Below are positions 874 to 55,226 of a stretch of 64,000 nucleotides of DNA, in pieces; position 1 is the first letter of the stretch, and every line of letters begins with the position of its first letter. Made by a program: the position numbers and the translations under genes. The notes beneath the pieces were generated by a model. The model did not search any database, had not been told where the DNA came from, and saw only the letters and a program-made list of their open reading frames with translations. Location of the stretch: the IMG/VR virus record IMGVR_UViG_3300023235_000008, positions 1 through 64,000 of that record. The stretch is one strand, 5' to 3'.

Positions 874-1117
874 ATATCCAACTGGTGCCAAGTTTTGGTA
901 TATTAATGGCAAACGTCATAGAACAGATGGACCAGCAATCGAATATCCAACTGGTAGCAAACATTGGTATATTAATGGCAAACTACATAGAACAGATGGA
1001 CCTGCCGTTGTACGTGTAGATGGCACCAATGGCTGGTGTTTGAATGGCATACAAGTTACTATGGAAGACGTATTGACTGAACAGGAAGCATTTTGGTGGA
1101 GAATGAAACATGAATGA
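866..1117 (+). CDS. HRxDGPA repeat protein, 2 repeats
   Basis: Same repeat; tail VTMEDVLTEQEAFWW; start overlaps the upstream stop. Confidence 0.9.
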   Translation: MTEYPTGAKFWYINGKRHRTDGPAIEYPTGSKHWYINGKLHRTDGPAVVRVDGTNGWCLNGIQVTMEDVLTEQEAFWWRMKHE

Positions 1118-1340
1118 CGATAAACAATCGTTTTGGGATAGTTTACGTATGCCACCCGACATAAGAAAAAACTGTCTTAACTGTAAGCATTTCGCATTTC
1201 ATAATAATCCCAATATACGCTATACAAATGCTAGGGATAACTGTAACCACCCGACAGCAGGAGTTCGAAAGAAACGGCGGTGCTGGGCAGCAGACAGTGA
1301 TGAAAAACGCCTTTGGAGATATAAACGATTCGTAGAATAA
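1110..1340 (+). CDS. KEFW-CxxC cassette-family small protein
   Basis: Leader MNDDKQSFWDSLRMP, CLNC plus two more Cys, terminal LWRY. Confidence 0.75.
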   Translation: MNDDKQSFWDSLRMPPDIRKNCLNCKHFAFHNNPNIRYTNARDNCNHPTAGVRKKRRCWAADSDEKRLWRYKRFVE

Positions 1341-1343
1341 CAC

Positions 1344-1371
1344 TTGACAATATTGTTGTTTTGCGTATAAT
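1344..1371 (+). promoter_or_regulatory. Sigma70-like early promoter (leaderless uvsE)
   Basis: TTGACA-N16-TATAAT, then 6 nt, then ATG at 1378. Confidence 0.8.
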
Positions 1372-1377
1372 CTTATT

Positions 1378-2403
1378 ATGAATTATTTTGACCAATCAAT
1401 ACAGCGTGTCGGCTTTGCATGTAAGTATATGCATCCCGACCAATCGCTCACCAAGAAGTTGCTGGAAGACGTTCAGCGACCGTTCAATGGCAAGACCACT
1501 ACTGCTCGTTGGCTTGCTTCACAATCATGCATTGATATAGCCGAACAGCGATTATATGAACTTGCCAAGTTTAACTGTGAATCAGTTATCAATCTTATCA
1601 AATATGTAGCCAGCTTGCCGCCTAATCAGCGTATGTTGCGCATCGGCAGTGACGTTCTACCAATGTATACCCATCCTGATTGGAAATACTTCTATAATAA
1701 TGATGTAAAACATCACGTTTCATCACGACTCAAACAGGCTGGCGACCTTGCACGTGATAATGATGTGCGACTATCAATGCATCCCGGTCAGTTTACCGTG
1801 CTTGCCAGTGACAACCCCGATATTGTAGAAAACTCTATTCGTGAGTTTGAATATCATGCTGACATTGCACGTATGATGGGTTATGGCGAAAACTTCATGG
1901 ACTTCAAAATTAACGTGCATATCTCTGGTCGCAACGGTCCCGATGGCATCGATGCCATTCTACCACGCTTGTCTACAGAAGCACGTAACTGTATCACTAT
2001 CGAGAATGATGAGAATGCGTGGGGTATTGACAGTTCACTTGACCTTGCTAATGACCTAGCACTTGTCCTTGACATACATCATCACTGGTGCCGTGAAGGC
2101 GAATACATACAGCCTACCGACGACCGATTCAAACGTGTCATTGACAGTTGGCGTGGTGTGCGTCCTACCATCCACTATAGCTTATCACGTGAGGATATCC
2201 TTATTGACCATCCTACCGATGTTATGCCCGATATGCCTACGTTGCTTGAGGATGGATACAAGAAACATAAACTACGTGCACACAGTGATATGATGTGGAA
2301 TACAGCGTGTAATCAATGGGCTGAATCATTCTTGCCATATGCTGACATCATGATCGAAGCCAAACATAAAAATCTTGCGTCTAGCGCATTGATTAACACT
2401 TGA
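1378..2403 (+). CDS. uvsE: UV damage endonuclease (UvdE/UvsE)
   Basis: Motifs GFACKY, MLRIGSD, RLSMHPGQFTVLAS, IENDE, LVLDIHHH, HYS, RAHSD, IEAKHK. Confidence 0.95.
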   Translation: MNYFDQSIQRVGFACKYMHPDQSLTKKLLEDVQRPFNGKTTTARWLASQSCIDIAEQRLYELAKFNCESVINLIKYVASLPPNQRMLRIGSDVLPMYTHPDWKYFYNNDVKHHVSSRLKQAGDLARDNDVRLSMHPGQFTVLASDNPDIVENSIREFEYHADIARMMGYGENFMDFKINVHISGRNGPDGIDAILPRLSTEARNCITIENDENAWGIDSSLDLANDLALVLDIHHHWCREGEYIQPTDDRFKRVIDSWRGVRPTIHYSLSREDILIDHPTDVMPDMPTLLEDGYKKHKLRAHSDMMWNTACNQWAESFLPYADIMIEAKHKNLASSALINT

Positions 2404-2878
2404 CATAAAGCGTATATGTGTTACAATGACTTTCGTATGGATTAATAGTAATAATAACGCATAAAAACATGTTATAATGGTGGTGATACCCGACCCACCA
2501 ATAATAAAAACAGTGGTATTATAACACATATACTCAATGCTGTCAACCCTTGCCATATATGTGATACAATGGGCTTGATGCCTGACGTATAATCATTCTA
2601 TCACCGTGAAATAAACGCTTGACAAAGTTTCTATGTGTGTTACAATGGACTGATGCCTGCGTAGTAATAATAAAAAAACGGCGTATCACTACCAGTATAA
2701 CACGTTTTCATATACTGTCAAGCAATCTTTTACCTTGACATAAAACATATATGTGTTAGAATGGACTGATGCCTACAGAATCGTTTTCAAATCAAACGTA
2801 TCACTACCAGTATAACACGTTTTCATCCATAGTCAAGTAAAAAGATTGCTTGACACAATGTATACCATATAGCATAAT
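2400..2878. promoter_or_regulatory. Dense array of forward and reverse sigma70-like promoters with no real ORF
   Basis: Forward: TTGACA-N16-TACAAT/TAGAAT at 2400, 2619 and 2735; TTGACA-N17-CATAAT at 2850; extended -10 at 2562-2570. Reverse: TTGACA-N17-TATAAT (2546-2518) and TTGAC(A/T)-N16-TATACT pairs. An exact 30-bp repeat lies at 2682-2711 and 2797-2826. Confidence 0.8.
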
Positions 2879-2880
2879 GA

Positions 2881-2937
2881 ACGTACAATAATATTGAGTG
2901 TAAAAATGCACTGTTCTGGTGGAAGATGAAAACATGA
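2881..2937 (+). pseudogene. Orphan tail of an HRxDGPA gene
   Basis: Reads TYNNIECKNALFWWKMKT*; CTGTTCTGGTGGAAGATGAAAACATGA is identical to the tails of downstream paralogs. Confidence 0.6.
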
Positions 2938-3335
2938 CTGAACCGATATGTCATACTTATGCAAATGGCGACAAGTATTGGTATCTACATGGCAAACTAC
3001 ATAGAACAGATGGACCAGCTGTTGAATATGCAAATGGCGACAAGTATTGGTTATTCAATGGTGAATCGCATAGGGAAGACGGACCAGCCATTGAAGAATC
3101 AAATGGTAGCAAGTGGTGGTTTAAGAATGGCGAAGTTCATAGGGATGACGGACCCGCCATTGAATATACAAATGGCACCAAAGAATGGTATTTGAATGAT
3201 AAACTACATAGAACAGATGGACCTGCCGTTGTACGTGCAAATGACACCGAATGGCGGTTGAATGGCGAACGTGTTACTATGGAAGACGTAATCACCGATC
3301 CAAAAGAACTGTTCTGGTGGAAGATGAAAACATGA
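2934..3335 (+). CDS. HRxDGPA repeat protein, 4 repeats
   Basis: Start at MTEPICHTY (ATGA overlap); conserved tail VTMEDVITDPKELFWWKMKT. Confidence 0.9.
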   Translation: MTEPICHTYANGDKYWYLHGKLHRTDGPAVEYANGDKYWLFNGESHREDGPAIEESNGSKWWFKNGEVHRDDGPAIEYTNGTKEWYLNDKLHRTDGPAVVRANDTEWRLNGERVTMEDVITDPKELFWWKMKT

Positions 3336-3730
3336 CTGAACCGATATGTCATACTTATGAAGATGGCACCAAACGTTGGTATACGAATGATAAACTTCAC
3401 AGAGAAGATGGACCTGCTGTTGAATATGCAAATGGTAGCAAATCTTGGTATCTACATGGCTTACGTCATAGAACAGATGGACCAGCAATCGAATCATATG
3501 GCAACATGTATTGGTATCTACATGGCAAACGTCATAGAGAAGATGGACCTGCTGTCGAAAATGTAAATGGCAACATGTATTGGTATCAATATGGCAAACG
3601 TCATAGAACAGATGGACCTGCTGTCATTTGCACGTACAACACCGAATGGCGGTTGAATGGCGAACGTGTTACTATGGAAGACGTAATCACCGATCCAAAA
3701 GAACTGTTCTGGTGGAAGTTAAGATCATGA
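3332..3730 (+). CDS. HRxDGPA repeat protein, 4 repeats
   Basis: Start corrected to the ATGA overlap (the ORF-track extension is the shifted frame of the previous tail). Confidence 0.9.
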   Translation: MTEPICHTYEDGTKRWYTNDKLHREDGPAVEYANGSKSWYLHGLRHRTDGPAIESYGNMYWYLHGKRHREDGPAVENVNGNMYWYQYGKRHRTDGPAVICTYNTEWRLNGERVTMEDVITDPKELFWWKLRS

Positions 3731-4062
3731 ATAAAAATGGAATGCATACCGATGCAAATGGCACCAAAGCTTGGTACTTTAATGATAAACTTCATAGAAC
3801 AGATGGACCTGCTATTGAAGAATCAAATGGCACCAAAGCTTGGTACTTGAATGGTGAATATCATCGAACAGATGGCCCTGCTATTGAATTTACAAATGGC
3901 GACAAACAATGGTTCAAGAATGGCAAACGTCATAGAACAGATGGACCTGCCATTGAGTTTGCTAATGGCAACAAGTATTGGTATTTGAATGGCGAACGTG
4001 TTACTATGGAAGACGTAATCACCGATCCAAAAGAACTGTTCTGGTGGAAGATGAAAACATGA
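3727..4062 (+). CDS. HRxDGPA repeat protein, 3 repeats
   Basis: MNKNGMHTDANGTKAW..., conserved tail; ATGA overlap. Confidence 0.9.
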   Translation: MNKNGMHTDANGTKAWYFNDKLHRTDGPAIEESNGTKAWYLNGEYHRTDGPAIEFTNGDKQWFKNGKRHRTDGPAIEFANGNKYWYLNGERVTMEDVITDPKELFWWKMKT

Positions 4063-4322
4063 CTGAACCGATATGTCATACTTATGAAGATGGCACCAAA
4101 TCTTGGTATTTGAATGATAAACTACATAGAACAGATGGCCCTGCCGTCGAATATGCAAATGGCACCAAACGTTGGTACTTGAATGATAAACTACATAGAA
4201 CAGATGGACCAGCTGTTGTACGTGCAAATGACACCGAATGGCGGTTGTATGGCGAACGTGTTACTATGGAAGACGTAATCACCGATCCAAAAGAACAGTT
4301 CTGGTGGAAACTAATATCTTGA
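4059..4322 (+). CDS. HRxDGPA repeat protein, 2 repeats
   Basis: MTEPICHTYEDG..., conserved tail; ATGA overlap. Confidence 0.9.
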   Translation: MTEPICHTYEDGTKSWYLNDKLHRTDGPAVEYANGTKRWYLNDKLHRTDGPAVVRANDTEWRLYGERVTMEDVITDPKEQFWWKLIS

Positions 4323-4954: not shown

Positions 4955-5074
4955 TACAAAACTTGGCGGAAAGAAAATGGTCAACTTCATAGAGAAGATG
5001 GTCCAGCCGCTTATCCATATGATAACTGGGAATGGAATAAAATGACTGACAAAGAACATGGTATTTTGGAATAA
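4955..5074 (+). pseudogene. Chimeric remnant: HRxDGPA repeat fused to a WEWN cassette end
   Basis: Reads TWRKENGQLHREDGPAAYPYDNWEWNKMTDKEHGILE*; the ATG at 4938 is one A short of being in frame. Confidence 0.65.
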
Positions 5075-5224: not shown

Positions 5225-5284
5225 ATGGTATTTTGGAATAAGTTACGTGAACCAGTTGACAACTGGGAATGGAATGGCAAATGA
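5225..5284 (+). other. Empty cassette: leader joined directly to the WEWNG end (19 aa)
   Basis: MVFWNKLREPVDNWEWNGK*; the 5' part duplicates 5058-5086. Confidence 0.75.
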
Positions 5285-5344
5285 TATAGTATTACGTGTG
5301 GTAAATGTCATGAACGCCCGACACGTATACTGGGAATGGAATAA
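5285..5344 (+). pseudogene. Cassette fragment (CGKCHE core plus WEWN end in another frame)
   Basis: TCGKCHE matches the 22286 member; TACTGGGAATGGAATAAA follows out of frame. Confidence 0.55.
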
Positions 5345-5382
5345 ACATTGACAACATTAGTAATAACTGCTAGTATACATTA

Positions 5383-5544
5383 ATGAATAAAGAAAAGTTT
5401 TGGAAGTCATTAAGTCATAACTGTGCTAATAACAGTCGAGGATACAATCAATCAGTGTATTGCAAAATCAAATCGTGCACTTCGTCGGCAAGTATGAGGG
5501 AGTATGGTGAAGTGTTTTGGGAATGGGATGGAAATGACGGATAA
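5383..5544 (+). CDS. KEFW cassette-family protein (53 aa, not in ORF track)
   Basis: MNKEKFWKSLSHNC...C...C...FWEWDGNDG; leaderless promoter TTGACA(5348)-N17-TAGTAT-N6-ATG. Confidence 0.75.
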   Translation: MNKEKFWKSLSHNCANNSRGYNQSVYCKIKSCTSSASMREYGEVFWEWDGNDG

Positions 5545-5779
5545 AGAAAAGTTTTGGAAAACGTTACGTGAACCGTCTGAGAAATCATGTAAAAACTGTA
5601 AATGGCGATATGATATAAAATCAGTTAAACTGAATGAAGATGGTTCGGAATGCACTTCAGAGGATTACGACCATATTGGTGATATTTGTGAAGCGTGTAC
5701 AATGAATAGGCACATCAGGAGTAATAATGACACATCGAATGTTATCCTGCCTAAATGGCAATGGAATAATAAACATTGA
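5534..5779 (+). CDS. KEFW-CxxC cassette-family protein
   Basis: MTDKEKFWKTLREPSEKSCKNC...CEAC...WQWNN. Confidence 0.8.
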   Translation: MTDKEKFWKTLREPSEKSCKNCKWRYDIKSVKLNEDGSECTSEDYDHIGDICEACTMNRHIRSNNDTSNVILPKWQWNNKH

Positions 5780-6001: not shown

Positions 6002-6290
6002 ATGGAATGGCGTGACGTAATGAAAGCCTTTTTTAAATTATTTAGAGAACTAAACGGACGTTATACTAATTACAATGGTCATAGAACTGACGGGCCATCT
6101 ATTGAACGTGTTACTATGGAAGATGGAATCATGAATGATGATGTTGTATGTGTGACAGATTCATATGGCAATAAGGCTTGGTATTTGAATGGCTTATGCT
6201 ATTGATTGTTAATGGCATCAATGACTGGTATTTACATGATAAAGAATATGATGTATTATCTGGGAAGGAAGCAATTGGGTATTGACGTAT
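6002..6290 (+). pseudogene. Decayed HRxDGPA gene fragments
   Basis: NGHRTDGPSIERVTMED joined to YGNKAWYLNG, followed by stops. Confidence 0.55.
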
Positions 6291-6519
6291 GACTGATGAT
6301 AAGGAAGAGTTTTGGAAGTCATTGACTACTATGCCTGTTATTGAGCGTTCCTGTGATAACTGTCGTTGGTTTAATGGTAAGTTTTGTATTGAGCCTATAT
6401 CTCTCCGCAATGACATTACGACTTGTATGTATGTTTATAGCGATGTTGATTATGATTCTGCGTATGTTAGTTATACTGGTTACAGTTTACCTAAATGGGA
6501 GCGTCGGGAGAATGATTGA
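6289..6519 (+). CDS. KEFW-CxxC cassette-family protein
   Basis: MTDDKEEFWKSLTTMP...CDNC...C...C...LPKWERR. Confidence 0.8.
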   Translation: MTDDKEEFWKSLTTMPVIERSCDNCRWFNGKFCIEPISLRNDITTCMYVYSDVDYDSAYVSYTGYSLPKWERREND

Positions 6520-6841
6520 ATGTAAGACTGATGATGCTGGCAACAAGTTTTGGTTTTTGAATGGTGAATATCATAGGGAAGACGGACCAGCTATTGAGTT
6601 TGCTAATGGCGACACGGTATGGTATATTAATGGCGAACGTCATAGGGAAGATGGTCCTGCTATTGAGTTTGCTAATGGCGACAAGTTTTGGTATAATCAT
6701 GACAATCGACATAGGGAAGATGGACCAGCTATTGAGTTTGCTAATGGCAACAAGTCTTGGTATTTACATGGTAAAGAAGTTACTGTGTATGATGTATTGA
6801 CTGATCCGAGAGAACAGTTTTGGTGGAAGATGAAATCATGA
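6512..6841 (+). CDS. HRxDGPA repeat protein, 3 repeats
   Basis: MIECKTDDAGNKFW...; tail VLTDPREQFWWKMKS; start corrected from 6341. Confidence 0.85.
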   Translation: MIECKTDDAGNKFWFLNGEYHREDGPAIEFANGDTVWYINGERHREDGPAIEFANGDKFWYNHDNRHREDGPAIEFANGNKSWYLHGKEVTVYDVLTDPREQFWWKMKS

Positions 6842-7438: not shown

Positions 7439-7603
7439 ATGAATGACAAAGAAGAATTTTGGAAAGCATTGAAGTCACCTATACGTGAGTGTAAAAACTG
7501 TGCTGTTATACATTCGTATGGTATGTCTACATTAACTAACAAGTATTGTCGTGAGTATTGTATCTCATGCGATAATTTCAGTAAGTGGATATCTGATGAA
7601 TAA
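7439..7603 (+). CDS. KEFW-CxxC cassette-family protein (54 aa, not in ORF track)
   Basis: MNDKEEFWKALKSPIRECKNC...CREYCISC...KWISDE; leaderless promoter at 7404-7432. Confidence 0.8.
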   Translation: MNDKEEFWKALKSPIRECKNCAVIHSYGMSTLTNKYCREYCISCDNFSKWISDE

Positions 7604-7624: not shown

Positions 7625-7834
7625 ATGGTTCTGAAGCACAAGGCTGAAGCCCCTGAATGGTTAATAGCGCATGGTGCTAATATTTGGTTAATTGATTATG
7701 ACGACACTGACGATGAAACTATATTTCGTCCTATACTTAAAGCTATTGGTCAGGACGATGAAGGAATATTTGATCCGGCGTATGTTAACTATGAAGGACG
7801 TAGTTTACCTATGTGGAAGGCACGTGATGAGTAA
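7625..7834 (+). CDS. Hypothetical protein, probable cassette member that lost its leader
   Basis: C-terminus YVNYEGRSLPMWKARDE resembles the 6289 member (YVSYTGYSLPKWERREND); an out-of-frame MNNKEY at 7596. Confidence 0.5.
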   Translation: MVLKHKAEAPEWLIAHGANIWLIDYDDTDDETIFRPILKAIGQDDEGIFDPAYVNYEGRSLPMWKARDE

Positions 7835-8015
7835 GCAGGAATTTTGGAATGATTTGCGGTCGGTGCCATTATCTGACCGTGATTGTAATAACTGTTTATA
7901 TTACACACGTAATACCACGCAGAGTTGGCTTAATTGTATATATTGTGTCCAAGATGCTAAAGATAGTAAAAAGCCTGTTGGTGCTTCGTCTGGTAGTTAT
8001 TGGAAACCAAAATGA
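7827..8015 (+). CDS. KEFW-CxxC cassette-family protein
   Basis: MSKQEFWNDLRSVP...CNNC...CIYC...YWKPK; start corrected from 7692. Confidence 0.8.
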   Translation: MSKQEFWNDLRSVPLSDRDCNNCLYYTRNTTQSWLNCIYCVQDAKDSKKPVGASSGSYWKPK

Positions 8016-8196
8016 GTAAGCAGGAATTTTGGGATGCACACAACCAACACAAAGGGGTTGTGATAACTGTAAGTATAATAAAAGAATAAATGGGGGGATT
8101 TACTCAGTATGTAAGCGACCAAACCAAGTCTACGCCTGTGTTGGATTTTATGGAAAAAAATCGCAATGGGAATGGGATGGTAAGAACTATGGGTAA
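8012..8196 (+). pseudogene. Frameshifted KEFW cassette
   Basis: MSKQEFWDA, then a shift to TQPTQRGCDNC...C...C...QWEWDGKNYG*. Confidence 0.75.
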
Positions 8197-12723: not shown

Positions 12724-12974
12724 TGAAAATCCGTGAACACTATTCGGTTCGTATCATTGACTTTGTGTGTGACCGTGATGAAAAAGAAATCATTCATGAT
12801 ATGATTTCGGATATCATTATGGACGACAAAATCGCAAGGGTAGTTCGTTCTGGGCCGCTTGTTGATGGTAATAAGATTATGCCCGGTAAGTTTCATTACA
12901 TCGTTCACATTGATAGTGAAGCTGCTGACGCCTTTATAAAATCCCTTAAAAAAATGGCAAATACCTTTGAGTGA
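12723..12974 (+). CDS. Hypothetical protein
   Basis: TAATG-coupled ORF. Confidence 0.65.
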   Translation: MKIREHYSVRIIDFVCDRDEKEIIHDMISDIIMDDKIARVVRSGPLVDGNKIMPGKFHYIVHIDSEAADAFIKSLKKMANTFE

Positions 12975-13308
12975 AAAAGATAATTTTTGGAATGCGTTGC
13001 GAATGCCACATGATTTGGATAGGCATTGTGTGAACTGTGCCGTCCCGCCACTTGCCGAGAATGGCATAAGCACGGGTTATTATGGATGCGTGATATCTGA
13101 ATCCTGCACAGCGCCACACCGATGCGTATTGCATCCAACAGAAACTGTGTTAACCAACGATAAAAATAATATAATATCTAGTGTAGAGGAATATATTGAA
13201 TATCAGTTAGCTGCATGGGAAGAAACGGTGAAAACATTCCCAAGCAAGAAGCCACCCGGCACAATACCATTTGAAAACTATTGGGAATGGAATGGCGATG
13301 ATGATTAA
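12967..13308 (+). CDS. KEFW-CxxC cassette-family protein (long, 113 aa)
   Basis: MSEKDNFWNALRMP...CVNC...C...C...C...YWEWNGDDD. Confidence 0.8.
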   Translation: MSEKDNFWNALRMPHDLDRHCVNCAVPPLAENGISTGYYGCVISESCTAPHRCVLHPTETVLTNDKNNIISSVEEYIEYQLAAWEETVKTFPSKKPPGTIPFENYWEWNGDDD

Positions 13309-20710: not shown

Positions 20711-21063
20711 AAGTAGTATACGGTGAAGATGTAAGCGAAATGTTTGGCGACAAGTATATCGTGCTTGAACTTGACACGTTTATGGTAGAAGGCGAAGAAC
20801 TCCCGGCGTGGTCAGTAATCAGTGCAGAAAATATTAGTCTTGGTGATTTACCACAAATGGACCATTGGAAAGAGTTTCACGCCAAGATGATTAATGGCTA
20901 CAAAACACAGCAATGGAACTTTGTATTGGATTGTGTATCTAATCTTCGTGGTAAATGGGGAGGAGAGATAGATTCATTTTATGACCATATGGAACAACGT
21001 GTGAAAGAGTTGCAGTTAAGTGTTCCTGACCATTGGACGCCTGTTATCCATCGCAATGGATAA
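20707..21063 (+). CDS. Conserved hypothetical phage protein
   Basis: YIVLELDTF...LRGKWGGEIDSFY. Confidence 0.75.
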   Translation: MKVVYGEDVSEMFGDKYIVLELDTFMVEGEELPAWSVISAENISLGDLPQMDHWKEFHAKMINGYKTQQWNFVLDCVSNLRGKWGGEIDSFYDHMEQRVKELQLSVPDHWTPVIHRNG

Positions 21064-21262
21064 AGAAGAGTTCTGGGAAGCGTTAAAAAGTAATCAAGAT
21101 TGCGAGGACTGTCGGTTCGCAAAGATATACCGAACGCTTGATGATAACAATCCAGATCATTTTCAAGTGTTTTGTCACGAGAAAAGCCAAATATTTCAAA
21201 ATCACTATGTTCCTGAGAAATGTAAGATGTGGAAGATAAGAAGATATGAGCTATTGGAATGA
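21056..21262 (+). CDS. KEFW-CxxC cassette-family protein
   Basis: MDKEEFWEALKS...CEDC...C...C.MW. Confidence 0.8.
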   Translation: MDKEEFWEALKSNQDCEDCRFAKIYRTLDDNNPDHFQVFCHEKSQIFQNHYVPEKCKMWKIRRYELLE

Positions 21263-21459
21263 ATAAGGATGCATTTTGGGAAGCGTTAAGTCTGCCATCG
21301 CCGTGGTTATAGCAACTGCAAGCATTTTAATACATCATATGTATATATTACATCAGTGATAACTCGTGTATCTGCACAGAACTAATGGATAAAGACTCCG
21401 CTACGACATGTAAGTACGGACACCCATGGTTACGCCAATGGGAACGGGATGGAAAATGA
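21259..21459 (+). pseudogene. Doubly frameshifted KEFW cassette
   Basis: MNKDAFWEALSLP / RGYSNCKH / CICTE...TCKYG...QWERDGK* lie in different frames. Confidence 0.7.
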
Positions 21460-22089: not shown

Positions 22090-22293
22090 ATGAATAAAAA
22101 AGAACACCAGTTTTGGAATATTTTAACCAATCCGATACCAGAACCTCGTTGTTCTAACTGTAGACACCGAGAGTATTTTAATGATACATGCTATCGTCTA
22201 CGTGAAACTGGCGAAGAAGAATGCGCTATATTTCTTATTAATGTGGTCCAAACTTATCCTTTTTGGGAATGGGATGGAACTTTTGATGAATAA
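22090..22293 (+). CDS. KEFW-CxxC cassette-family protein
   Basis: MNKKEHQFWNILTNP...CSNC...C...C...FWEWDG; leaderless promoter at 22055-22083. Confidence 0.8.
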   Translation: MNKKEHQFWNILTNPIPEPRCSNCRHREYFNDTCYRLRETGEEECAIFLINVVQTYPFWEWDGTFDE

Positions 22294-22489
22294 GAATGAG
22301 TTTATCAAGGCTTTATCTGAACCGTATGATAAAAGTTGTCTGAACTGTAAGTTTGCCAGACGGTCTGGCACAATGCCAGAGGATGGATATAATAACAAGT
22401 GTGGGAAGTGTCACGAACACGATCCAGAAATGATAAATAAACCTGACCTGTATCCAGAAGACAACTGGGAATGGAACGGCGACAAATGA
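22286..22489 (+). CDS. KEFW-CxxC cassette-family protein
   Basis: MNKNEFIKALSEP...CLNC...CGKC...DNWEWNGDK. Confidence 0.8.
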   Translation: MNKNEFIKALSEPYDKSCLNCKFARRSGTMPEDGYNNKCGKCHEHDPEMINKPDLYPEDNWEWNGDK

Positions 22490-22713
22490 ATAAAGATAAA
22501 GAACAGTTTTGGGAATCAATGGTATCGCCTGAAATCGGGTGCGGCACATGTAAGCACTTAGAACCAGATGGTGCCGAAAGTTGTGGGAGGGTGCTACTAC
22601 AGGACGAGGATGAATGCATTGTTGTATCCCGCATGGTGAGTGACAGTCACCCGAAGAGTATATACCCACATTGGGAATGGGATGGAGTTAACACAGAGGA
22701 CAATGACCGATGA
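22486..22713 (+). CDS. KEFW-CxxC cassette-family protein
   Basis: MNKDKEQFWESMVSP.GCGTC...C...C...HWEWDG. Confidence 0.8.
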   Translation: MNKDKEQFWESMVSPEIGCGTCKHLEPDGAESCGRVLLQDEDECIVVSRMVSDSHPKSIYPHWEWDGVNTEDNDR

Positions 22714-32572: not shown

Positions 32573-33183
32573 TTATAGAAGATTATGAAAACCCGTTTGA
32601 CGCATTATTAGATTTTGAGGATATGCTGTCGGAATATACTGGCGCACCTTATGTGGTGTTAACAGATTGTTGCACACACGCATTGGAACTGTGCTTACGG
32701 CACGAATATACAATGTGGGATGTCACATTGCCAGCCCGAACATATCTAAGTATTCCGATGATGTTAAAAAAGATTAACAAGAACTATTTCTTTAAGGATA
32801 TTGATTGGGAAGAAGATGGCGAATACGATGTCATTCCAAGTGTATACGATTCGGCAAGATTATTTGAAGAAGGAATGTTCCGTCCACGTGAAAAGCAATG
32901 CCTTAGTTTTGGGCACGGAAAACCATTGCAAATCGGCGCAGGTGGTGCTATACTATTAGATAACGCTGACGACTACGCTACCTTAAAACGTATGGCATAT
33001 GATGGTCGTAACATTCATACCTATGATAAATGGGCTGACCAAAATGTATTTGATATTGGTTATCATTATCATATGCGTCCTGAATGGGCAATAAAAGGTA
33101 TGCGGATGTTGGATGATGGTGATATCAAATCCCCGCCGCCATTCAACTATCCTGATTTGCGAGATATAACTATCAATGGATGA
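32569..33183 (+). CDS. DegT/DnrJ/EryC1/StrS-like PLP aminotransferase (short form)
   Basis: TDCCTHALELCL, TYLSIP, YDSA, CLSFGHGKPL.IG.GG.ILLD, GYHYHM. Confidence 0.85.
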   Translation: MIIEDYENPFDALLDFEDMLSEYTGAPYVVLTDCCTHALELCLRHEYTMWDVTLPARTYLSIPMMLKKINKNYFFKDIDWEEDGEYDVIPSVYDSARLFEEGMFRPREKQCLSFGHGKPLQIGAGGAILLDNADDYATLKRMAYDGRNIHTYDKWADQNVFDIGYHYHMRPEWAIKGMRMLDDGDIKSPPPFNYPDLRDITING

Positions 33184-33412
33184 CAGTAAACAAGAGTTTT
33201 GGAATGCGCTAACCCAGCCAACAAAAAGAACGTGTGATAACTGTTTCTTTAACGAAGCTACGGTTAGCACCACATCGTGTTCATTGCGGGCTGGATTAAT
33301 GTGCGATGTTCATAATGATTATATTTACTCATCGGTTGCAAACACAAGTAGCAGACCTTTTAACACGTATAAAGCAAAAAGATTATGGGAATGGGATAGA
33401 AAAAATGCATAA
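33176..33412 (+). CDS. KEFW-CxxC cassette-family protein
   Basis: MDDSKQEFWNALTQPTKRTCDNC...C...C...LWEWDR. Confidence 0.8.
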   Translation: MDDSKQEFWNALTQPTKRTCDNCFFNEATVSTTSCSLRAGLMCDVHNDYIYSSVANTSSRPFNTYKAKRLWEWDRKNA

Positions 33413-33912: not shown

Positions 33913-34152
33913 ATGAATAAAGAAAAGTTTTGGAAAGCATTGCGTGAACCAACACACCATAACTGCCGTAACTGTAAACATCTTGATCATTTTGCGAATA
34001 TGGGTATGGGAAATTACTCTGTTGTGTGTGACACCAAATCTGAAAATGGTCGTATGCTAGACCCTGATTGTGCTAGCATTTCACACCCAATCAGTGGAGC
34101 CACCCGAGCATTATATAAAGATAATTGGGAATGGAATGGAAAAGATGAATAA
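33913..34152 (+). CDS. KEFW-CxxC cassette-family protein
   Basis: MNKEKFWKALREP...CRNC...C...C...DNWEWNG. Confidence 0.8.
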   Translation: MNKEKFWKALREPTHHNCRNCKHLDHFANMGMGNYSVVCDTKSENGRMLDPDCASISHPISGATRALYKDNWEWNGKDE

Positions 34153-34345
34153 AGATAAAGAACTGTTTTGGGAAGAACTCTGCGCCGACCCACCAGAACC
34201 AAAACCATATATAGTATCATATTACGATGATGGACATCACGTAGAGGTAGAATATTCGGATGGAAGTATTAGTGCGTGGGGCAAAGATATAGAAGAAGAA
34301 CTGATGCGATTGTTGGTAACCGAGATTGAAGATGATAGTAAATAG
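34145..34345 (+). CDS. KEFW leader fused to an unrelated acidic body
   Basis: MNKDKELFWEELCADP, then YIVSYYDDG...; no WEW. Confidence 0.65.
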   Translation: MNKDKELFWEELCADPPEPKPYIVSYYDDGHHVEVEYSDGSISAWGKDIEEELMRLLVTEIEDDSK

Positions 34346-36407: not shown

Positions 36408-36608
36408 ATGATTACCACCCCTATAACTCTAGCATTATTGTTAATGATTGTGACCAGCATGATTCGTGTTTTGATGAATGGGGAAAATGGCAGCAATATT
36501 GATAAGATTATGGCGATGGCGATGACCCTCGCGCCGCTAATGGTAGTCACTGGCATGGTGTTTATATCCTATGTCGTCTTCAACTTCATTTCCGCACTGA
36601 TCGGCTAA
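36408..36608 (+). CDS. Small membrane protein
   Basis: AAGGAG SD; two TM helices. Confidence 0.6.
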   Translation: MITTPITLALLLMIVTSMIRVLMNGENGSNIDKIMAMAMTLAPLMVVTGMVFISYVVFNFISALIG

Positions 36609-36898
36609 TGAACAAACAACAATTTTTCAAGGCCCTCTCAGAACCCACTGTAAAAGCCAAACGAATGAATAAAGAAGAATTCTGGCAAGCATTGAGTCAA
36701 CCTATATTTCACAGGCACACTTGCGCCTCTTGTAAATACGCCGAGCATGGTAATCCTAAAGGATGGGGGGCGGACCATGACCAGACGTACGATTACAAAC
36801 CCTGTATGGTGTGCCAAACCACGCCCCCGAACGATCTAATGCATAAAGACAATGCATGGGAATGGGATGGTAAAACTATGCCTGATGATGAGTATTAA
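36608..36898 (+). CDS. KEFW-CxxC cassette-family protein with a duplicated leader
   Basis: MNKQQFFKALSEP..MNKEEFWQALSQP...CASC...CMVC...AWEWDG. Confidence 0.8.
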   Translation: MNKQQFFKALSEPTVKAKRMNKEEFWQALSQPIFHRHTCASCKYAEHGNPKGWGADHDQTYDYKPCMVCQTTPPNDLMHKDNAWEWDGKTMPDDEY

Positions 36899-39725: not shown

Positions 39726-40007
39726 ATGAAACTACCTATAAACTATACGAGAATCGGTGCACGCGAGCGTCGTGAAGTCCGTGAAGAATACATTCGCATT
39801 CAAGACGGAAAATGTTGGTGGTGTGAGAACGCACTTACCGATAATCCTACCACTGAGATTATGGATACAGATGTTAATCGTCGGTTATTCCCGCCGAACT
39901 TCTTTAAGCATCCTGTTCACTTACAGCATGATCATGATACTGGTATGACCGAAGGTGCGGTTCATGCCAGATGCAATGCAGTAATGTGGCAATACCACGG
40001 GAAATGA
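39726..40007 (+). CDS. Endonuclease VII-like / HNH-type small protein
   Basis: QDGKCWWC...HLQHDHDTG...GAVHARCN. Confidence 0.8.
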   Translation: MKLPINYTRIGARERREVREEYIRIQDGKCWWCENALTDNPTTEIMDTDVNRRLFPPNFFKHPVHLQHDHDTGMTEGAVHARCNAVMWQYHGK

Positions 40008-40195
40008 ACGACAGGGAAAAGTTTTGGCAGGATTTATCAAAGCCGCCGTTGAATAGACGAGGTTGCCGCAACTGTATTCATTTCGCTTCATCGGGTTTAC
40101 TAAGCGATTGTATGAATCCAGTGGGCATGACAATATGTAGTGGGGGGCGTGACGAGTATTGGGAGTGGAATGGCGAACATTGTTATGGACGATAA
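40004..40195 (+). CDS. KEFW-CxxC cassette-family protein
   Basis: MNDREKFWQDLSKPP...CRNC...C...C...YWEWNG. Confidence 0.8.
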   Translation: MNDREKFWQDLSKPPLNRRGCRNCIHFASSGLLSDCMNPVGMTICSGGRDEYWEWNGEHCYGR

Positions 40196-40382: not shown

Positions 40383-40587
40383 AATAACGACAACATTACG
40401 TGACGGTATTCGTGACAATGCTGGCGTGGCTGTAACCAATGCCCTACACGGTATGGGATTCGATATGCTAAAAAGCACCCGCATCGGTAAGGTATTTTAC
40501 ATTGAAACAGATGATGATATTAACGAGATTGTTAAACACATTGTCAATCCAGTTATGGAGGATTTTACCATTGAAAAACAAGACTAA
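40372..40587 (+). CDS. purS: Phosphoribosylformylglycinamidine synthase subunit PurS
   Basis: TLRDGIRDNAGVAV..AL..MGF...RIGK.F.I......VNPVMEDF. Confidence 0.85.
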   Translation: MRYKITTTLRDGIRDNAGVAVTNALHGMGFDMLKSTRIGKVFYIETDDDINEIVKHIVNPVMEDFTIEKQD

Positions 40588-40807
40588 GAAAGAAAAGTTT
40601 TGGGAAGCATTGCATATGCCACAAAATAAGAACTGTAGTACCTGCATATATGACGGCGATCCTACCTATAACAAAGATCATATGTATTCTGAACCAGATG
40701 GACCCTGCTTTCATCCTACTCGCACCGAAGATGAGGGGTGTTCTTTAGGTAGACCCGCCTCGAATAACTCTTTCCCGTTTTGGAAATGGGATGGGGTATC
40801 GACATAA
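40571..40807 (+). CDS. KEFW-CxxC cassette-family protein (TTG start)
   Basis: KKEKFWEALHMPQ.KNCSTC...C.HP...C...FWKWDG. Confidence 0.75.
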   Translation: MKNKTKKEKFWEALHMPQNKNCSTCIYDGDPTYNKDHMYSEPDGPCFHPTRTEDEGCSLGRPASNNSFPFWKWDGVST

Positions 40808-53128: not shown

Positions 53129-53214
53129 AATGATTGACATTATTGATTTAATAGATTACACTTCATTTAACAATGATTGACATCATTGATTTAATAGATT
53201 ACACTTCATTTAAC
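53129..53214 (+). repeat. 43-bp tandem duplication of a promoter
   Basis: Two copies (1 mismatch), each containing TTGACA-N17-TACACT. Confidence 0.85.
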
Positions 53215-53239
53215 AATTAGGCACATAGGAACCTCGTAA

Positions 53240-53389
53240 ATGTTAGAAGATATCGATCTTGATCTTAAAGAAGTAGAAAAGTTTCTACAAGATGGCGGCG
53301 ATATGGAAGATTTAATTATCTCTGTATTTATTGAATATGGATATGACCCAGAGACAGCCTTTGAAATGGCTAAATCTTATTTTTTATAG
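53240..53389 (+). CDS. Small acidic protein (49 aa)
   Basis: AGGA SD; MLEDIDLDLKEVEKFL... Confidence 0.5.
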   Translation: MLEDIDLDLKEVEKFLQDGGDMEDLIISVFIEYGYDPETAFEMAKSYFL

Positions 53390-53958
53390 AACTTCGTAAC
53401 ATCTGTAACTAAATTAGCCACATCGGGGTCTGCTAACACGACCGCCAAAAAATCTATTGGTGCCCGAGCGCCAGTGAATGCATATAGTTCTTGTTGGTTA
53501 TCAGAAACAAGGTCTTTTCCGATGTGATAATTTTTCGCTGCTATAGACACAAGTTTTTCTAGCATTCGACTGTCTTGTGTGTGTAATAATGCGCCAAAGC
53601 CCCAAGACGATCCTGATTGATTTCTTCCTCTATATATCGCACCCATATCATTGGATTGTCCAACTTTACTTGCGGTTCCTTCGAACGAGAATTTAATTGG
53701 ATTTTGTATATCTATAATTGGGAAACCGCCACTCGATTCAGATAATCCATATATTAGGTGTCCAGAACCACCGATATAAACACACGGTACATGATACGTT
53801 TTTTCGAATCTACTATGAGATACCCCATAGTGTTCTGTTATACAACTGTTATAATCATCTTGATTAAAATATGGATGATCGCATGGACCTTTTTTATCCA
53901 ACACATTGTAAATTAAGGATTGCGGTAGAAAATTCTTTGTTATTAATTGTTTAGTCAT
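53377..53958 (-). CDS. Hypothetical protein
   Basis: 193-aa AT-rich ORF. Confidence 0.65.
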   Translation of the reverse strand: MTKQLITKNFLPQSLIYNVLDKKGPCDHPYFNQDDYNSCITEHYGVSHSRFEKTYHVPCVYIGGSGHLIYGLSESSGGFPIIDIQNPIKFSFEGTASKVGQSNDMGAIYRGRNQSGSSWGFGALLHTQDSRMLEKLVSIAAKNYHIGKDLVSDNQQELYAFTGARAPIDFLAVVLADPDVANLVTDVTKFYKK

Positions 53959-54301
53959 TAAAATGTCTCTTTCTGTGTGATTGAATTTATAAACTATTAT
54001 ACCATGCGCACAGGTGGTGATTTCAATATAAAAGATTATATAAACATATTGACTATTATTACGAGTATTTGATATAATACATATTTATGGGTTGACAATC
54101 TACTGATTTGTGGGTATAGTTACATCATAATGAAAAGGAAGAGAAAATGCAGATTTATATGGACACCAGCGACAACATTAGCGCCAGCGAAATGGCAGCA
54201 TTTATGTCCGAAATCAACTCTATTTTGGTCAACCAAAACCCCAAGCGTGAAGAAGCCGCCCGTATTATTGAAATGAACGGTCAGGCAGCAGAAGCTAATA
54301 A

Positions 54302-54511
54302 ATGATTTGGTCACTTGTGCTAATATCTGTTTTAACCGGTAATCCTGTCGTAGACTTGAAACCACTTGGTAAGTTTTCTGTATATGGGCATTGTGACCGT
54401 ATGATGCAGAAAATGAATGCGAAACGTGATATATCCGTCAGTTATTTTGACTGCCGCTTGCAGTTACCAAATGGAATCCGTGAAAATAAAGAAAAAATCG
54501 AGGCAAGATAA
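54302..54511 (+). CDS. Small secreted hypothetical protein
   Basis: Hydrophobic N-terminus; Cys pair. Confidence 0.55.
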   Translation: MIWSLVLISVLTGNPVVDLKPLGKFSVYGHCDRMMQKMNAKRDISVSYFDCRLQLPNGIRENKEKIEAR

Positions 54512-54771
54512 ATACAATATGATCGACTAGAATACTACTATTTGCGAGGTACAACAGCCCATTCAAAGATGCTGTTGACCTCTTTTTTTGTGCGGAGATG
54601 AAAAATGGATAGTTTAGAATATATCGAAATGACAGGCTGTGAGCGTATTTTACATCGTGTATCAGCAACAAGCGTTAACACACCGTGGGCAGCAGATGCC
54701 GACAAAAACTTAGAGATTGTCAAACAGTTTTTGGCACATCGTTATCAAGAATTAAAGGATAAAACTTAACA

Positions 54772-54993
54772 TTGGCTAAAGAAGAATTGCTAGAATTAGA
54801 GGGTGAAATCATTGACGTTTTACCACAAAGTATGTTTAAAATCAAAGTGGATAATTCGGAACACATAGTTCTGGCATATCTTAGCGGAAAGATGCGCAAG
54901 TTCAAAATCAAGTTGGTATTGGGCGATAAGGTTAAAATCGAAGTGTCACCATATGACGTTTCAAAAGGTCGAGTAACTTATAGGCATAAATGA
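54772..54993 (+). CDS. infA: Translation initiation factor IF-1
   Basis: [10 protein letters not shown]...LP..MF.....[12 protein letters not shown]....GDKV..E.SPYD..KGR.TYR. Confidence 0.95.
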
Positions 54994-55226
54994 TGGACAA
55001 AGACAAAGATAAAGAACAGTTTTGGGACGATTTAAAAGCACCGTTTGCACCAGAAAACTGCGGGTGTGTTAGTTGCGCCCGTCCAAGTGCAGGTATGATG
55101 ATGTCGCCCAACTTTCTGTATGCATGTGAAATCTGCGGCAATAAACGGTGCCCGCATCACACGCATCATGCACGTGCATGTACTAACAGTAATGAACCGG
55201 GACAAAAAGGAAGTATTTACAAATGA
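54990..55226 (+). CDS. KEFW leader fused to a different Cys/His-rich domain
   Basis: [14 protein letters not shown], then [12 protein letters not shown]...[12 protein letters not shown]. Confidence 0.75.

What the first reader, a model, noticed from the sequence alone, without database searches (positions are those of the whole stretch)
1110..55226. Dispersed family of about 35 cassette-like mini-genes with fixed ends (M..KE.FW..L..P ... WEW[N/D]G) and a variable Cys core
Seen: 23 intact ORFs of 53-113 aa start at 1110, 5058, 5383, 5534, 6289, 7439, 7827, 12967, 21056, 22090, 22286, 22486, 23048, 23700, 31415, 32348, 33176, 33913, 36608, 36900, 37120, 40004 and 40571. About 8 more are broken or empty, and 3-4 are leader fusions. 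All are on the + strand. They share an N-terminal leader, usually CxxC plus two more Cys, and 18 of 23 end in W-x-W-[N/D]. The middles are mostly unalignable by eye. The ends are conserved at DNA level too: ATGAATAAAGA(T)AAAG...TTTTGG at the 5' end and AACTGGGAATGG(A/G)ATGG at the 3' end. A 34-nt junction is identical at 22463-22496 and 23192-23225. Almost every copy starts and ends in an ATGA-type or 8-nt stop/start overlap. Inference: this is either a self-spreading mini-element that targets start codons, or a phage cassette library (constant targeting tag plus diversified Zn-binding payloads, e.g. anti-defence). I recognise no named family with this architecture. No recombinase or RT is in the window.
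Basis: partly seen in the sequence, partly recalled or inferred. Interest (0 to 1): 0.92.

Follow-up and report, generated by a model that had tools for sequence, protein, structure and literature searches.

The report
Expanded phage zinc mini-protein family
An uncultivated 230-kb phage carries more than 30 copies of an undescribed small four-cysteine protein with fixed ends and a variable middle, and the copies look like an ordinary but very large gene-family expansion reshuffled by recombination, not a self-spreading element.

Summary
The window is the first 64 kb of a 230-kb viral contig. It carries 24 intact or nearly intact ORFs, about 8 broken copies and 3 leader fusions, all on the + strand. 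Consensus: M-x-K-E-x-F-W-x-x-L-x-x-P, CxxC 12 or 14 residues after the F, two more Cys, then WEW[D/N]G near the C-terminus.

The family matches nothing in Pfam, PHROGs, NCBIfam, PDB or BFVD. It still forms at least 182 clusters (50% identity) in metagenomes and sits in arrays in several other viral contigs.

The ends are conserved mainly as protein; synonymous sites vary. Copies sit exactly at stop/start overlaps. A closer relative has the same copies at the same sites. A more distant relative lacks several, and there the flanking genes abut. Two pairs of near-identical phages differ by exactly one copy, bounded by leader repeats, which indicates unequal homologous recombination. One orthologue pair shows strong purifying selection.

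Best reading: a new C4 zinc mini-domain family that evolves by birth and death and probably acts as a set of diversified binders. A portable leader on unrelated proteins is unexplained. I found no evidence of dedicated mobility machinery.

The parts
1110..1340 (+). family copy, 76 aa; leader and CxxC present, tail degenerate
4955..5047 (+). remnant: piece of an HRxDGPA repeat joined to a family tail (..DNWEWNK), no start codon
5058..5219 (+). family copy, 53 aa; leader truncated by a frameshift (an MTDKE start lies upstream in another frame)
5225..5284 (+). 'empty' copy: 19-aa ORF with the leader joined directly to the tail
5310..5345 (+). tail remnant (..YWEWNKH)
5383..5544 (+). family copy, 53 aa; CxxC knuckle degenerate
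5534..5779 (+). family copy, 81 aa
5799..5926 (+). two remnants: the CxxC part (5799-5840) and a tail (5891-5926) in different frames
6289..6519 (+). family copy, 76 aa; tail degenerate
7439..7603 (+). family copy, 54 aa; no tail
7827..8015 (+). family copy, 62 aa; tail degenerate
8012..8196 (+). frameshifted copy: leader at 8012-8038 in one frame, CxxC-to-tail ORF at 8029-8196 in another
12967..13308 (+). family copy, 113 aa, TTG start, long middle
21056..21262 (+). family copy, 68 aa; tail degenerate
21259..21456 (+). frameshifted, broken copy
22090..22293 (+). family copy, 67 aa; first of a three-copy tandem array
22286..22489 (+). family copy, 67 aa; recent paralogue of the 23048 copy (57% identity)
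22486..22713 (+). family copy, 75 aa
23048..23218 (+). family copy, 56 aa; used for the second structure model
23215..23703 (+). leader fusion, 162 aa, no Cys core; a homologue of its C-terminal domain exists elsewhere without the leader
23700..23873 (+). family copy, 57 aa; its 27-nt leader is identical to that of the 34145 fusion
31415..31612 (+). family copy, 65 aa, between two ATGA overlaps; site empty in phage B, occupied in phage C
32348..32572 (+). family copy, 74 aa; orthologue in phage C (49% identity); phage B has a leader-only 47-aa ORF at this site
33176..33412 (+). family copy, 78 aa; site empty in phage B; orthologue in phage C (46% identity)
33913..34152 (+). family copy, 79 aa; orthologue in phage C (73% identity); 59 of 60 nt of its 5' module match a copy elsewhere on the contig that has an unrelated core
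34145..34345 (+). leader fusion, 66 aa, no Cys core; conserved in phage C with its leader (46% identity)
36608..36898 (+). family copy, 96 aa, with a duplicated leader (second leader starts at 36665); first of an array that is absent from phage B
36900..37127 (+). family copy, 75 aa
37120..37332 (+). family copy, 70 aa; recent paralogue of the 36900 copy (53% identity)
40004..40195 (+). family copy, 63 aa
40185..40311 (+). frameshifted, broken copy
40571..40807 (+). family copy, 78 aa, TTG start
54993..55226 (+). leader on a different Cys/His-rich 77-aa protein, no tail
268..4322 (+). tandem array of six HRxDGPA-repeat (YwqK/MORN-like) genes, interrupted by the 1110-1340 copy and an endonuclease gene. 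Each ends in ..DPKEQFWWKMK, which resembles the family leader. Approximate genes: 268-873, 866-1117, 2934-3335, 3332-3730, 3727-4062, 4059-4322.
6512..6841 (+). HRxDGPA-repeat gene with the same leader-like C-terminal helix
10767..11030 (+). HRxDGPA-repeat gene with the same leader-like C-terminal helix

Best explanation
This is a previously undescribed, phage-restricted family of small proteins, typically 55-80 aa. They are most likely a C4 zinc-binding mini-domain.

Domain layout:
- an N-terminal amphipathic helix (K-E-x-F-W-x-x-L-x-x-P);
- a CxxC knuckle at fixed spacing from that helix;
- a length-variable loop region holding two more Cys;
- a C-terminal WEW[D/N]G motif.

The fixed ends and the four Cys are the fold. 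The variable middle is surface.

In this 230-kb phage the family has expanded to more than 30 copies, in tandem arrays and as single genes wedged exactly into stop/start overlaps of operons. They are therefore co-transcribed and translationally coupled with their neighbours.

The family evolves by birth and death. The similar end-coding stretches (17-60 nt identical between some copies) serve as substrates for ordinary homologous recombination. That adds or removes whole copies, makes chimeras (leader fusions, tail fusions, mosaic copies) and leaves pseudogenes.

What is shown: the anatomy, the distribution, vertical inheritance with gain and loss, recombination footprints, and purifying selection.

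What is inferred: zinc binding, and the function. I take the proteins to be a panel of diversified small binders used in host takeover or counter-defence.
For: Family reality and novelty
- HMM and motif counts in the window.
- 182 clusters at E<=1e-3 among 1.84 billion representative proteins.
- No Pfam, PHROG, NCBIfam, PDB or BFVD match.
- Two members give no tblastn hit in 50,697 GenBank phage records.

Domain character, from 150 representatives
- Exactly 4 Cys in 74%.
- F-to-CxxC spacing of 12 or 14 residues in 91%.
- W 98%, L 90%, P 91% conserved.
- The tail lies 1-4 residues from the C-terminus in most members.
- AlphaFold models give a confident N-terminal helix and C-terminus and a low-confidence middle.

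Ends conserved as protein, not as DNA.

Arrays in other phages: L008, L009, L039/L060/L063, and L019 on the same contig.

Vertical inheritance: phage C has positional orthologues of five copies at 30-73% identity, with flanking proteins at 68-82%.

Gain or loss at exact junctions: in phage B the flanking genes overlap directly at two window sites, and one whole array is absent.

Recombination at the ends
- One-copy indels bounded by a 29-nt repeat (L060 vs L039) and a roughly 20-nt leader repeat (L196 vs L023).
- A 59/60-nt shared 5' module followed by unrelated cores.
- 26-34-nt identical stretches between dispersed copies.

Functional constraint: pN 0.006 against pS 0.248 for one orthologue pair. 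The flanking gene shows 0.022 against 0.377.

Precedent: a roughly 35-copy zinc-ribbon expansion in Bacillus phage G (PMC7824862).
Against: - Zinc binding and the fold are not demonstrated. The models are only moderate (pLDDT 70-73, pTM about 0.46) and match no known structure.
- The function is pure inference. No partner, expression timing or host is known.
- The leader also occurs, with a Pro-rich linker, on at least six unrelated proteins without the Cys core, and one of these is conserved in a relative. It also occurs at the C-terminus of the repeat proteins. This suggests the leader has a role of its own that a 'fold element' reading does not explain.
- The direction of the junction differences with phage B (gain or loss) cannot be decided for two of the sites.
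- Only part of the 230-kb contig was examined.
Confidence: 0.6

Rival explanations
1. Tag plus payload. The leader helix is a portable addressing or docking peptide that brings many different payloads to one destination or partner. The payloads are the zinc mini-domains, a few unrelated domains and the repeat proteins. The destination could be the virion for co-injection, as with the T4 capsid targeting sequence on internal proteins, or a shared phage or host factor such as the phage's own ClpX.
For: - The leader sits at the N-terminus of unrelated proteins that lack the Cys core, usually followed by a Pro-rich linker: window 23215 and 34145, L019 2893-3195, L197 4489-4668, L200 1521-1724.
- The 34145 fusion is conserved with its leader in phage C.
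- A homologue of the C-terminal domain of the 23215 protein exists without the leader.
- A leader-like helix ends all eight repeat proteins of this lineage, but not the wider repeat family.
- T4 internal proteins are diverse anti-restriction proteins that share only a capsid targeting sequence (PMC3012670).
- The phage encodes ClpX.
Against: - In 91% of family members the leader lies at a fixed 12- or 14-residue distance from the CxxC knuckle. The C-terminal motif is equally conserved. The leader therefore looks like part of one domain.
- The Glu that a T4-type L-x-E cleavage site would need is present in only 38% of members and is followed by Pro.
- The leader fusions could be by-products of recombination.
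- No virion data exist.
Confidence: 0.2
2. Autonomous mini-element. The cassette is a selfish unit that copies itself into start or stop codon overlaps by a dedicated mechanism.
For: - Copies sit exactly between duplicated ATGA or 8-nt overlaps, and a relative shows precise empty sites.
- Copies are dispersed over more than 55 kb and on both strands of the contig.
Against: - No recombinase, transposase or reverse transcriptase was seen among the ORFs scanned.
- There are no terminal DNA repeats beyond coding similarity.
- The copies are old and positionally conserved in phage C.
- Strong purifying selection acts on the protein.
- The one-copy indels are explained by leader-to-leader homologous recombination.
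- Overlapping stop/start junctions also occur between genes outside the family.
Confidence: 0.06
3. RiPP-type precursor peptides. A conserved leader (and follower) guides a modifying enzyme that acts on a hypervariable Cys-rich core, as in the prochlorosin lanthipeptide precursors.
For: - The layout is a conserved leader, a Cys-containing variable core and many paralogues.
- A radical SAM gene lies 1 kb from an array in another phage (L008).
Against: - The four Cys are positionally conserved with a CxxC knuckle, which is typical of a metal site and not of a variable core.
- The cores are 28-85 residues from the CxxC knuckle to the tail motif and are under purifying selection.
- No maturase, protease or exporter was found in the window.
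- The leader also sits on 60-160-aa proteins without Cys.
Confidence: 0.04
4. DNA- or RNA-level cassette. The conserved ends are regulatory or recombination sequences, like the promoter-stem-loop (PeSL) elements of T4-type phages, or a diversity-generating system rewrites the middles.
For: - 17-60-nt identical end stretches occur between some copies.
- The three best sigma-70-like matches on the + strand lie just upstream of arrays.
- PeSL-mediated shuffling and mini-circles are documented in T4-type phages (PMC2839356).
Against: - Synonymous sites in the ends vary freely overall.
- Genes overlap by 4-8 nt, which leaves no room for intergenic elements.
- Promoter and terminator counts equal the shuffled expectation.
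- The middles are unalignable, not A-biased variants of a template, and they are conserved between close relatives.
Confidence: 0.04

Closest known systems
Lineage-specific expansion of a zinc ribbon in Bacillus phage G (about 35 copies; Iyer et al. 2021, PMC7824862)
   Same: A large phage carries some 30-35 paralogues of a very small Cys4 protein of unknown role. The authors suggest transcription factors or DNA-binding proteins.
   Different: - No detectable homology. The family HMM scores E=0.78 at best in the first 50 kb of phage G, and tblastn of two members finds nothing in any GenBank phage.
- The one Cys4 small protein read there (gp29) has two CxxC pairs and lacks the FW leader and the WEW tail. 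Whether gp29 belongs to the expansion the paper describes was not checked.
- The present family also has portable end modules.
T4 internal proteins with a capsid targeting sequence (PMC3012670)
   Same: A short conserved N-terminal helix-like tag sits on otherwise unrelated, fast-evolving small proteins that act against host defences. The loci are variable between relatives.
   Different: - Here most members also share four Cys and a C-terminal motif, so they are one domain family.
- The L-x-E cleavage site is not conserved (Glu 38%).
- Packaging into the capsid is untested.
- The only phage relatives detected for two large window proteins (ClpX and the 808-aa protein) are jumbo phages, not T4-type phages. 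T4 hallmark genes were not searched for.
PeSL-mediated modular shuffling in T4-type phages (PMC2839356, PMC4122927)
   Same: Short conserved sequences that flank small non-essential genes act as recombination sites. The result is insertion, deletion or replacement of whole genes between close relatives, with possible excised circles.
   Different: PeSLs are intergenic promoter-terminator elements. Here the repeated sequences are the translated ends of the genes themselves, and they are conserved for protein reasons.
Prochlorosin-type RiPP precursor families (own knowledge)
   Same: Dozens of paralogous small genes per genome with a constant leader and a variable Cys-containing remainder.
   Different: Here the Cys positions are fixed, there is a conserved C-terminus, no maturase is present, and the leader also occurs on ordinary-sized proteins.
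Integron gene cassettes (own knowledge)
   Same: Arrays of small, co-oriented, promoterless genes that vary by whole units.
   Different: - No attC sites. There is no intergenic space, because the genes overlap by 4-8 nt.
- No integrase was seen.
- The units are homologous to each other.

Membership tests
Any curated protein family (Pfam-A, PHROGs v4, NCBIfam 20) | Score above the family threshold against a library HMM | tested here: not met
   10, 22 and 95 members were scanned. Only scattered sub-threshold chance hits appeared.
C4 zinc-binding mini-domain (generic zinc knuckle or ribbon) | Four positionally conserved Cys, including a CxxC knuckle | tested here: met
   Exactly 4 Cys in 111 of 150 representatives. 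CxxC lies at a fixed spacing of 12 or 14 residues in 136 of 150. Three Cys columns are invariant in the 76-sequence alignment (C18, C21, C53).
C4 zinc-binding mini-domain (generic zinc knuckle or ribbon) | Bound metal and a fold like a known zinc finger class | tested here: inconclusive
   AlphaFold pLDDT 69.5 and 72.7. Foldseek against PDB and BFVD gave no match. The PDB profile search gave only non-significant ArfGAP and other zinc-finger hits at E>=0.33. Metal binding is not testable with these tools.
Phage G zinc-ribbon expansion | Sequence homology to the phage G ZnR paralogues | tested here: not met
   The family HMM on a six-frame translation of phage G bases 1-50,000 gives a best E of 0.78. 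The rest of that genome was not scanned.
T4-type capsid-targeted internal proteins | N-terminal tag ending in a conserved (L/I)-x-E protease site | tested here: not met
   L is 90% conserved, but the Glu two residues later is present in only 38% and is followed by Pro in 91%.
T4-type capsid-targeted internal proteins | Presence in the virion and cleavage by the prohead protease | not testable with these tools
   This needs virion proteomics. The phage is uncultivated.
Mobile element (IS, MITE-like or homing) | Terminal DNA repeats or a target-site duplication, plus an element-encoded or trans-acting enzyme | tested here: not met
   End similarity follows codon constraint. Only ATGA or 8-nt gene overlaps flank the copies. 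No recombinase or RT was found among the scanned ORFs of the window. The remaining 166 kb of the contig was not examined.
Integron cassette array | attC recombination site after each cassette and an intI integrase | tested here: not met
   Adjacent genes overlap by 4-8 nt, so no attC-sized spacer exists. No integrase domain was found.
PeSL regulatory cassettes | Intergenic sigma-70-like promoter plus a stem-loop terminator flanking the variable genes | tested here: not met
   79 promoter-like sites against 70.4 expected, and 14 terminator-like sites against 13.2 expected, in 20-39.9 kb. The genes abut.
Diversity-generating retroelement target | Reverse transcriptase, a template repeat, and adenine-specific differences in a variable repeat | tested here: not met
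   No RT was found among the scanned ORFs. The cores are unalignable between paralogues yet nearly identical between close relatives (1 nonsynonymous against 9 synonymous differences).
RiPP precursor family | Leader-dependent maturase nearby, a hypervariable core and leader cleavage | tested here: inconclusive
   No maturase was found in the window. A radical SAM gene lies near one array in L008. The fixed Cys positions argue against this family. Cleavage and modification are not testable here.

The most novel reading that the evidence does not exclude
The K-E-x-F-W-x-x-L-x-x-P helix is a portable addressing peptide used by this phage group. It directs a library of more than 30 diversified zinc mini-domains, several unrelated small proteins, and (as a C-terminal tag) eight repeat proteins to a common destination or partner. 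That destination could be the capsid, for co-injection as a ready-made counter-defence arsenal, or a phage-encoded ClpX. The translated ends would also act as recombination handles that let payloads be swapped between loci and phages. It would be a coding-sequence analogue of T4's capsid-targeting-sequence and PeSL systems combined.
Probability: 0.15. Interest if true: 0.85.

Novelty: new variant of a known kind. Interest (0 to 1): 0.58.

Why it matters
Large phages devote much of their coding capacity to small proteins of unknown function. A few such proteins, where studied, have turned out to be specific inhibitors of host defence or host machinery.

This finding offers a well-delimited new domain family:
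- at least 182 clusters at 50% identity, seen only in viral or metagenomic sequence in my searches;
- absent from every curated library searched;
- clear structural anchors (the fixed ends and four Cys);
- more than 30 divergent yet individually conserved paralogues in one genome, one of the largest expansions of a single small domain in a phage.

It gives a natural panel of variants on one scaffold for binder or target discovery. It is also a clean example of how translated gene ends can double as recombination sites that add, delete and recombine genes at exact operon junctions.

If the leader proves to be an addressing tag, it would reveal a new protein-sorting signal in phages.

Tried and rejected
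Searches that found nothing
- Near-identity DNA search of an adjacent non-family region of the window (8212-14903) against GenBank phages, to identify the phage: no match.
- tblastn of two members against GenBank phages: no match.
- Word-indexed protein search with the paralogue alignment: only 6 hits, too insensitive for proteins this short. It was replaced by the full HMMER scan.
- A leader DNA pattern scan of 185,579 bacterial and archaeal genomes gave 120 single hits. None is a family member by HMM.
- Foldseek of both models against PDB and BFVD: nothing.
- The supplement of the jumbo-phage paper is not held, so the phage G ZnR sequences could not be taken from it. Only the first 50 kb of phage G was scanned.

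Ideas rejected
- HNH or other nuclease: no Pfam hit.
- DGR: no RT, and the cores are conserved between close relatives.
- Integron or PeSL: no intergenic space.
- Strict DNA-level conservation of the ends: synonymous sites vary.

Left as suggestive only
- Common origin of the family tail (WEWNG) and the repeat unit (WYLNG), and of the leader and the repeat proteins' C-terminal helix. hhalign aligns only 11 columns (E 4.6e-4, probability 33%). The C-terminal helix is specific to this phage lineage within a repeat family of more than 7,000 members. A single ancestral fusion with a leader, followed by tandem duplication, is the simplest account.

Full report

Yes. All 23 start coordinates give ORFs of 53-113 aa with the stated features.

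An HMM built from them and run on all six frames of the window finds 24 strong matches and about ten partial ones. All credible matches are on the + strand.

| Motif | + strand | - strand | Expected from shuffles |
|---|---|---|---|
| Strict leader K[EDQ]xFW | 31 | 0 | 0.15 |
| Tail WxW[ND]x | 24 | 0 | 0.1 |

Other claims that check out:
- The 34-nt identical junction at 22463-22496 and 23192-23225 exists.
- 18 of 23 ORFs end in W-x-W-[N/D].
- 17 of 27 copies overlap the upstream ORF by 4 nt (ATGA) or 8 nt, and about 13 overlap the downstream start in the same way.
- Broken copies are real. They include a 19-aa ORF at 5225-5284 that joins the leader directly to the tail, and frameshifted copies at 8012-8196, 21259-21456 and 40185-40311. 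The stretch 4955-5926 is a patch of remnants.

**2. Where the window comes from**

The window equals bases 1-64,000 of IMG/VR contig IMGVR_UViG_3300023235_000008, which is 230,059 bp. Identical DNA occurs in three other JGI metagenomes and several ENA assemblies.

It is an uncultivated large phage.
- No near-identical GenBank phage exists.
- The window encodes ClpX, Hsp20, a MotA/ExbB-like protein, a CCA-adding enzyme, PTH2, PstS, PurS, a UvdE-like endonuclease, a cell-wall hydrolase and several homing-endonuclease-like genes.
- Distant similarity is to jumbo phages.
- No tRNA genes were found.

Five more tandem copies, plus one leader fusion, lie elsewhere on the same contig on the other strand, co-oriented with their neighbours (L019). 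The genome therefore has more than 30 intact copies.

**3. A real protein family that is not in the libraries**

A full HMMER scan of 1.84 billion representative proteins finds 182 clusters at E<=1e-3, and 10 at E<=1e-10.

Over 150 representatives:

| Feature | Frequency |
|---|---|
| K at position -3 from the F | 82% |
| F | 86% |
| W | 98% |
| L | 90% |
| P | 91% |
| CxxC begins 12 residues after the F | 102 of 150 |
| CxxC begins 14 residues after the F | 34 of 150 |
| Exactly four Cys | 74% |

The distance from CxxC to the tail varies from 28 to 85 residues. The tail is usually 1-4 residues from the C-terminus.

No match was found in any of the following:
- Pfam, PHROG or NCBIfam;
- PDB sequences (best E 0.33);
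- tblastn of two members against 50,697 GenBank phage records.

AlphaFold models (pLDDT 69.5 and 72.7) show a confident N-terminal helix and C-terminus and an uncertain middle. Foldseek finds nothing in PDB or BFVD.

A leader DNA pattern found true members in about half of its 61 viral-contig hits. It found none in 120 hits in bacterial and archaeal genomes, although that scan was truncated.

Other viral contigs carry arrays:
- L008 has 5 copies.
- L039, L060 and L063 have 4-8 copies in 8 kb.
- L009 has 2-3 copies in 576 bp.

Others carry single copies.

**4. Are the ends conserved as DNA?**

Only weakly. Third codon positions vary freely. Where two copies share a residue:

| Region | Same codon observed | Expected from codon usage |
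|---|---|---|
| Leader | 57% | 45% |
| Tail | 59% | 48% |

The ends are therefore kept by selection on the protein.

On top of that there are local, recent DNA identities between particular copies:
- 26-34 nt identical stretches;
- 59 of 60 nt shared by the 5' module of the 33913 copy and a copy elsewhere on the contig, followed by unrelated cores.

These are footprints of recombination or gene conversion.

**5. Comparison with relatives**

Three relatives were found.

*Phage C* (L197, L200) has flanking proteins 68-82% identical to the window's. It carries positional orthologues of the copies at 31415, 32348, 33176 and 33913, and of the leader fusion at 34145. They are 30-73% identical, with conserved ends and diverged middles.

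*Phage B* (L023, and L016 = L054 = L071) has flanking proteins 55-77% identical.
- It has the same neighbouring genes.
- At the 31415 and 33176 sites those genes overlap each other directly.
- The 36.6-kb array is absent, and so is the whole 5.0-8.2-kb cluster.
- At the 32348 site it has a 47-aa ORF with a leader only.
- One copy is present before the orthologue of the 341-aa gene.

In the window each inserted copy lies exactly between two stop/start overlaps. The operon reading is therefore preserved.

*Near-identical pairs* differ by exactly one copy in two cases:
- L060 vs L039 (99.4% identity): a 197-nt unit bounded by a 29-nt identical leader repeat.
- L196 vs L023 (90-94% identity): a unit bounded by a leader repeat of about 20 nt.

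That is the signature of unequal homologous recombination between adjacent leaders.

For the copy shared by L196 and L023 there are 9 synonymous and 1 nonsynonymous differences, giving pS 0.248 and pN 0.006. This selection is as strong as, or stronger than, that on the neighbouring 337-aa gene, which shows pS 0.377 and pN 0.022.

Within the window most paralogues are at most about 40% identical to each other. Several have closer counterparts in other contigs.

So the copies are old, individually maintained genes. They are not recent hops.

**6. Modules that travel**

The leader also heads proteins without the Cys core:
- window 23215-23703, 162 aa. A homologue of its C-terminal domain, P0153, lacks the leader;
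- window 34145-34345, conserved in phage C;
- window 54993-55226;
- L019 2893-3195;
- L197 4489-4668;
- L200 1521-1724.

In most of these fusions a Pro-rich linker follows the leader.

A tail ends a Toprim-like protein in L060. The Pfam Toprim hits are below threshold.

All eight HRxDGPA-repeat (YwqK/MORN-like) proteins in the window end in ..DPKEQFWWKMK.
- hhalign aligns this with the leader over 11 columns (E 4.6e-4).
- This ending is specific to this phage lineage within a repeat family of more than 7,000 members.
- A remnant at 4955-5047 joins a repeat fragment to a family tail.

These chimeras fit recombination within and around the arrays. The conserved leader fusions also leave open that the leader has a function of its own.

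**7. What it most likely is**

It is a new C4 zinc mini-domain family. The fixed ends and the four Cys form the fold, and the variable middle is exposed surface. The family has expanded greatly in this phage lineage.

It evolves by birth and death through ordinary homologous recombination at the similar end-coding sequences. Selection keeps only insertions that preserve the stop/start overlaps.

Function is inferred, not shown. I propose a panel of small diversified binders for host takeover or counter-defence.

The closest precedent is the roughly 35-copy zinc-ribbon expansion in Bacillus phage G (PMC7824862). It is not detectably homologous.

Two other systems work in similar ways:
- T4 internal proteins, which share only a capsid targeting sequence (PMC3012670);
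- PeSL-mediated modular shuffling (PMC2839356).

The defining features of both were tested here and not met.

**8. Verdict**

'No named family' and 'cassette-like architecture' stand.

'Self-spreading element' is not supported.

'Tag plus payload library' remains an open minority reading.

The novelty is a new family with unusual modular ends, within a known kind of phenomenon. Interest is moderate to high.

Noticed in passing
window 268-4322, 6512-6841, 10767-11030: Eight tandem or dispersed paralogues of an HRxDGPA 23-residue repeat protein (YwqK/MORN-like, weak DUF6745). Neighbouring genes overlap by ATGA. The wider family has more than 7,400 metagenomic relatives, but the C-terminal ..VTMEDVITDPKEQFWWKMK ending is specific to this phage lineage.
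   Followed up: partly
window 14887-18374: A phage-encoded ClpX (15248-16504) is preceded by a conserved 127-aa ORF with no family match. It is followed by Hsp20 (17315-17803) and a MotA/ExbB-like protein (17895-18374). No ClpP was seen.
   Followed up: partly
window 27603-30029 and 37336-38850: Minus-strand islands sit in an otherwise + strand region. One holds a T5orf172-type gene (27603-27878) and a 358-aa ORF (27878-28954), next to a UDP-glucose dehydrogenase that has a weak intein-splicing hit. The other holds a SbmA/BacA-like transporter (37336-38295) and a GIY-YIG endonuclease (38395-38850).
   Followed up: no
window 22055-22083, 36357-36385, 39654-39683: The three best sigma-70-like promoter matches on the + strand of 20-39.9 kb each lie just upstream of a mini-gene array (22090, 36608, 40004). 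The total number of promoter-like sites is no higher than in shuffles.
   Followed up: no
window 9438-10064, 12028-12504, 24379-24792, 40372-41906, 50077-51405: Auxiliary genes are scattered among the copies: a cytidylyltransferase-like (NMNAT-type) protein, a dual-specificity phosphatase-like protein, PTH2, PurS, PstS, and a CCA-adding tRNA nucleotidyltransferase. No tRNA genes are in the window.
   Followed up: partly
L060 6217-6219 vs L039 991-1243: A 253-nt indel lies outside the mini-gene array between two phages that are 99.4% identical. It sits in an intergenic region.
   Followed up: no
L008 3370-4332 (minus strand): A radical SAM gene lies about 1 kb from a five-copy mini-gene array in an unrelated 48-kb viral contig. 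This is the only hint of a possible peptide-modifying enzyme near the family.
   Followed up: no
L197 3742-4261 vs window 31591-32355: In phage C the 254-aa DUF6071-like gene of the window is replaced by two small ORFs (117 and 60 aa). The mini-genes on both sides are retained.
   Followed up: no
L060 1819-2526: A 235-aa protein with a weak Toprim domain ends in ..WTWEWDGKSYE, the family tail. It is followed directly by another family copy.
   Followed up: partly
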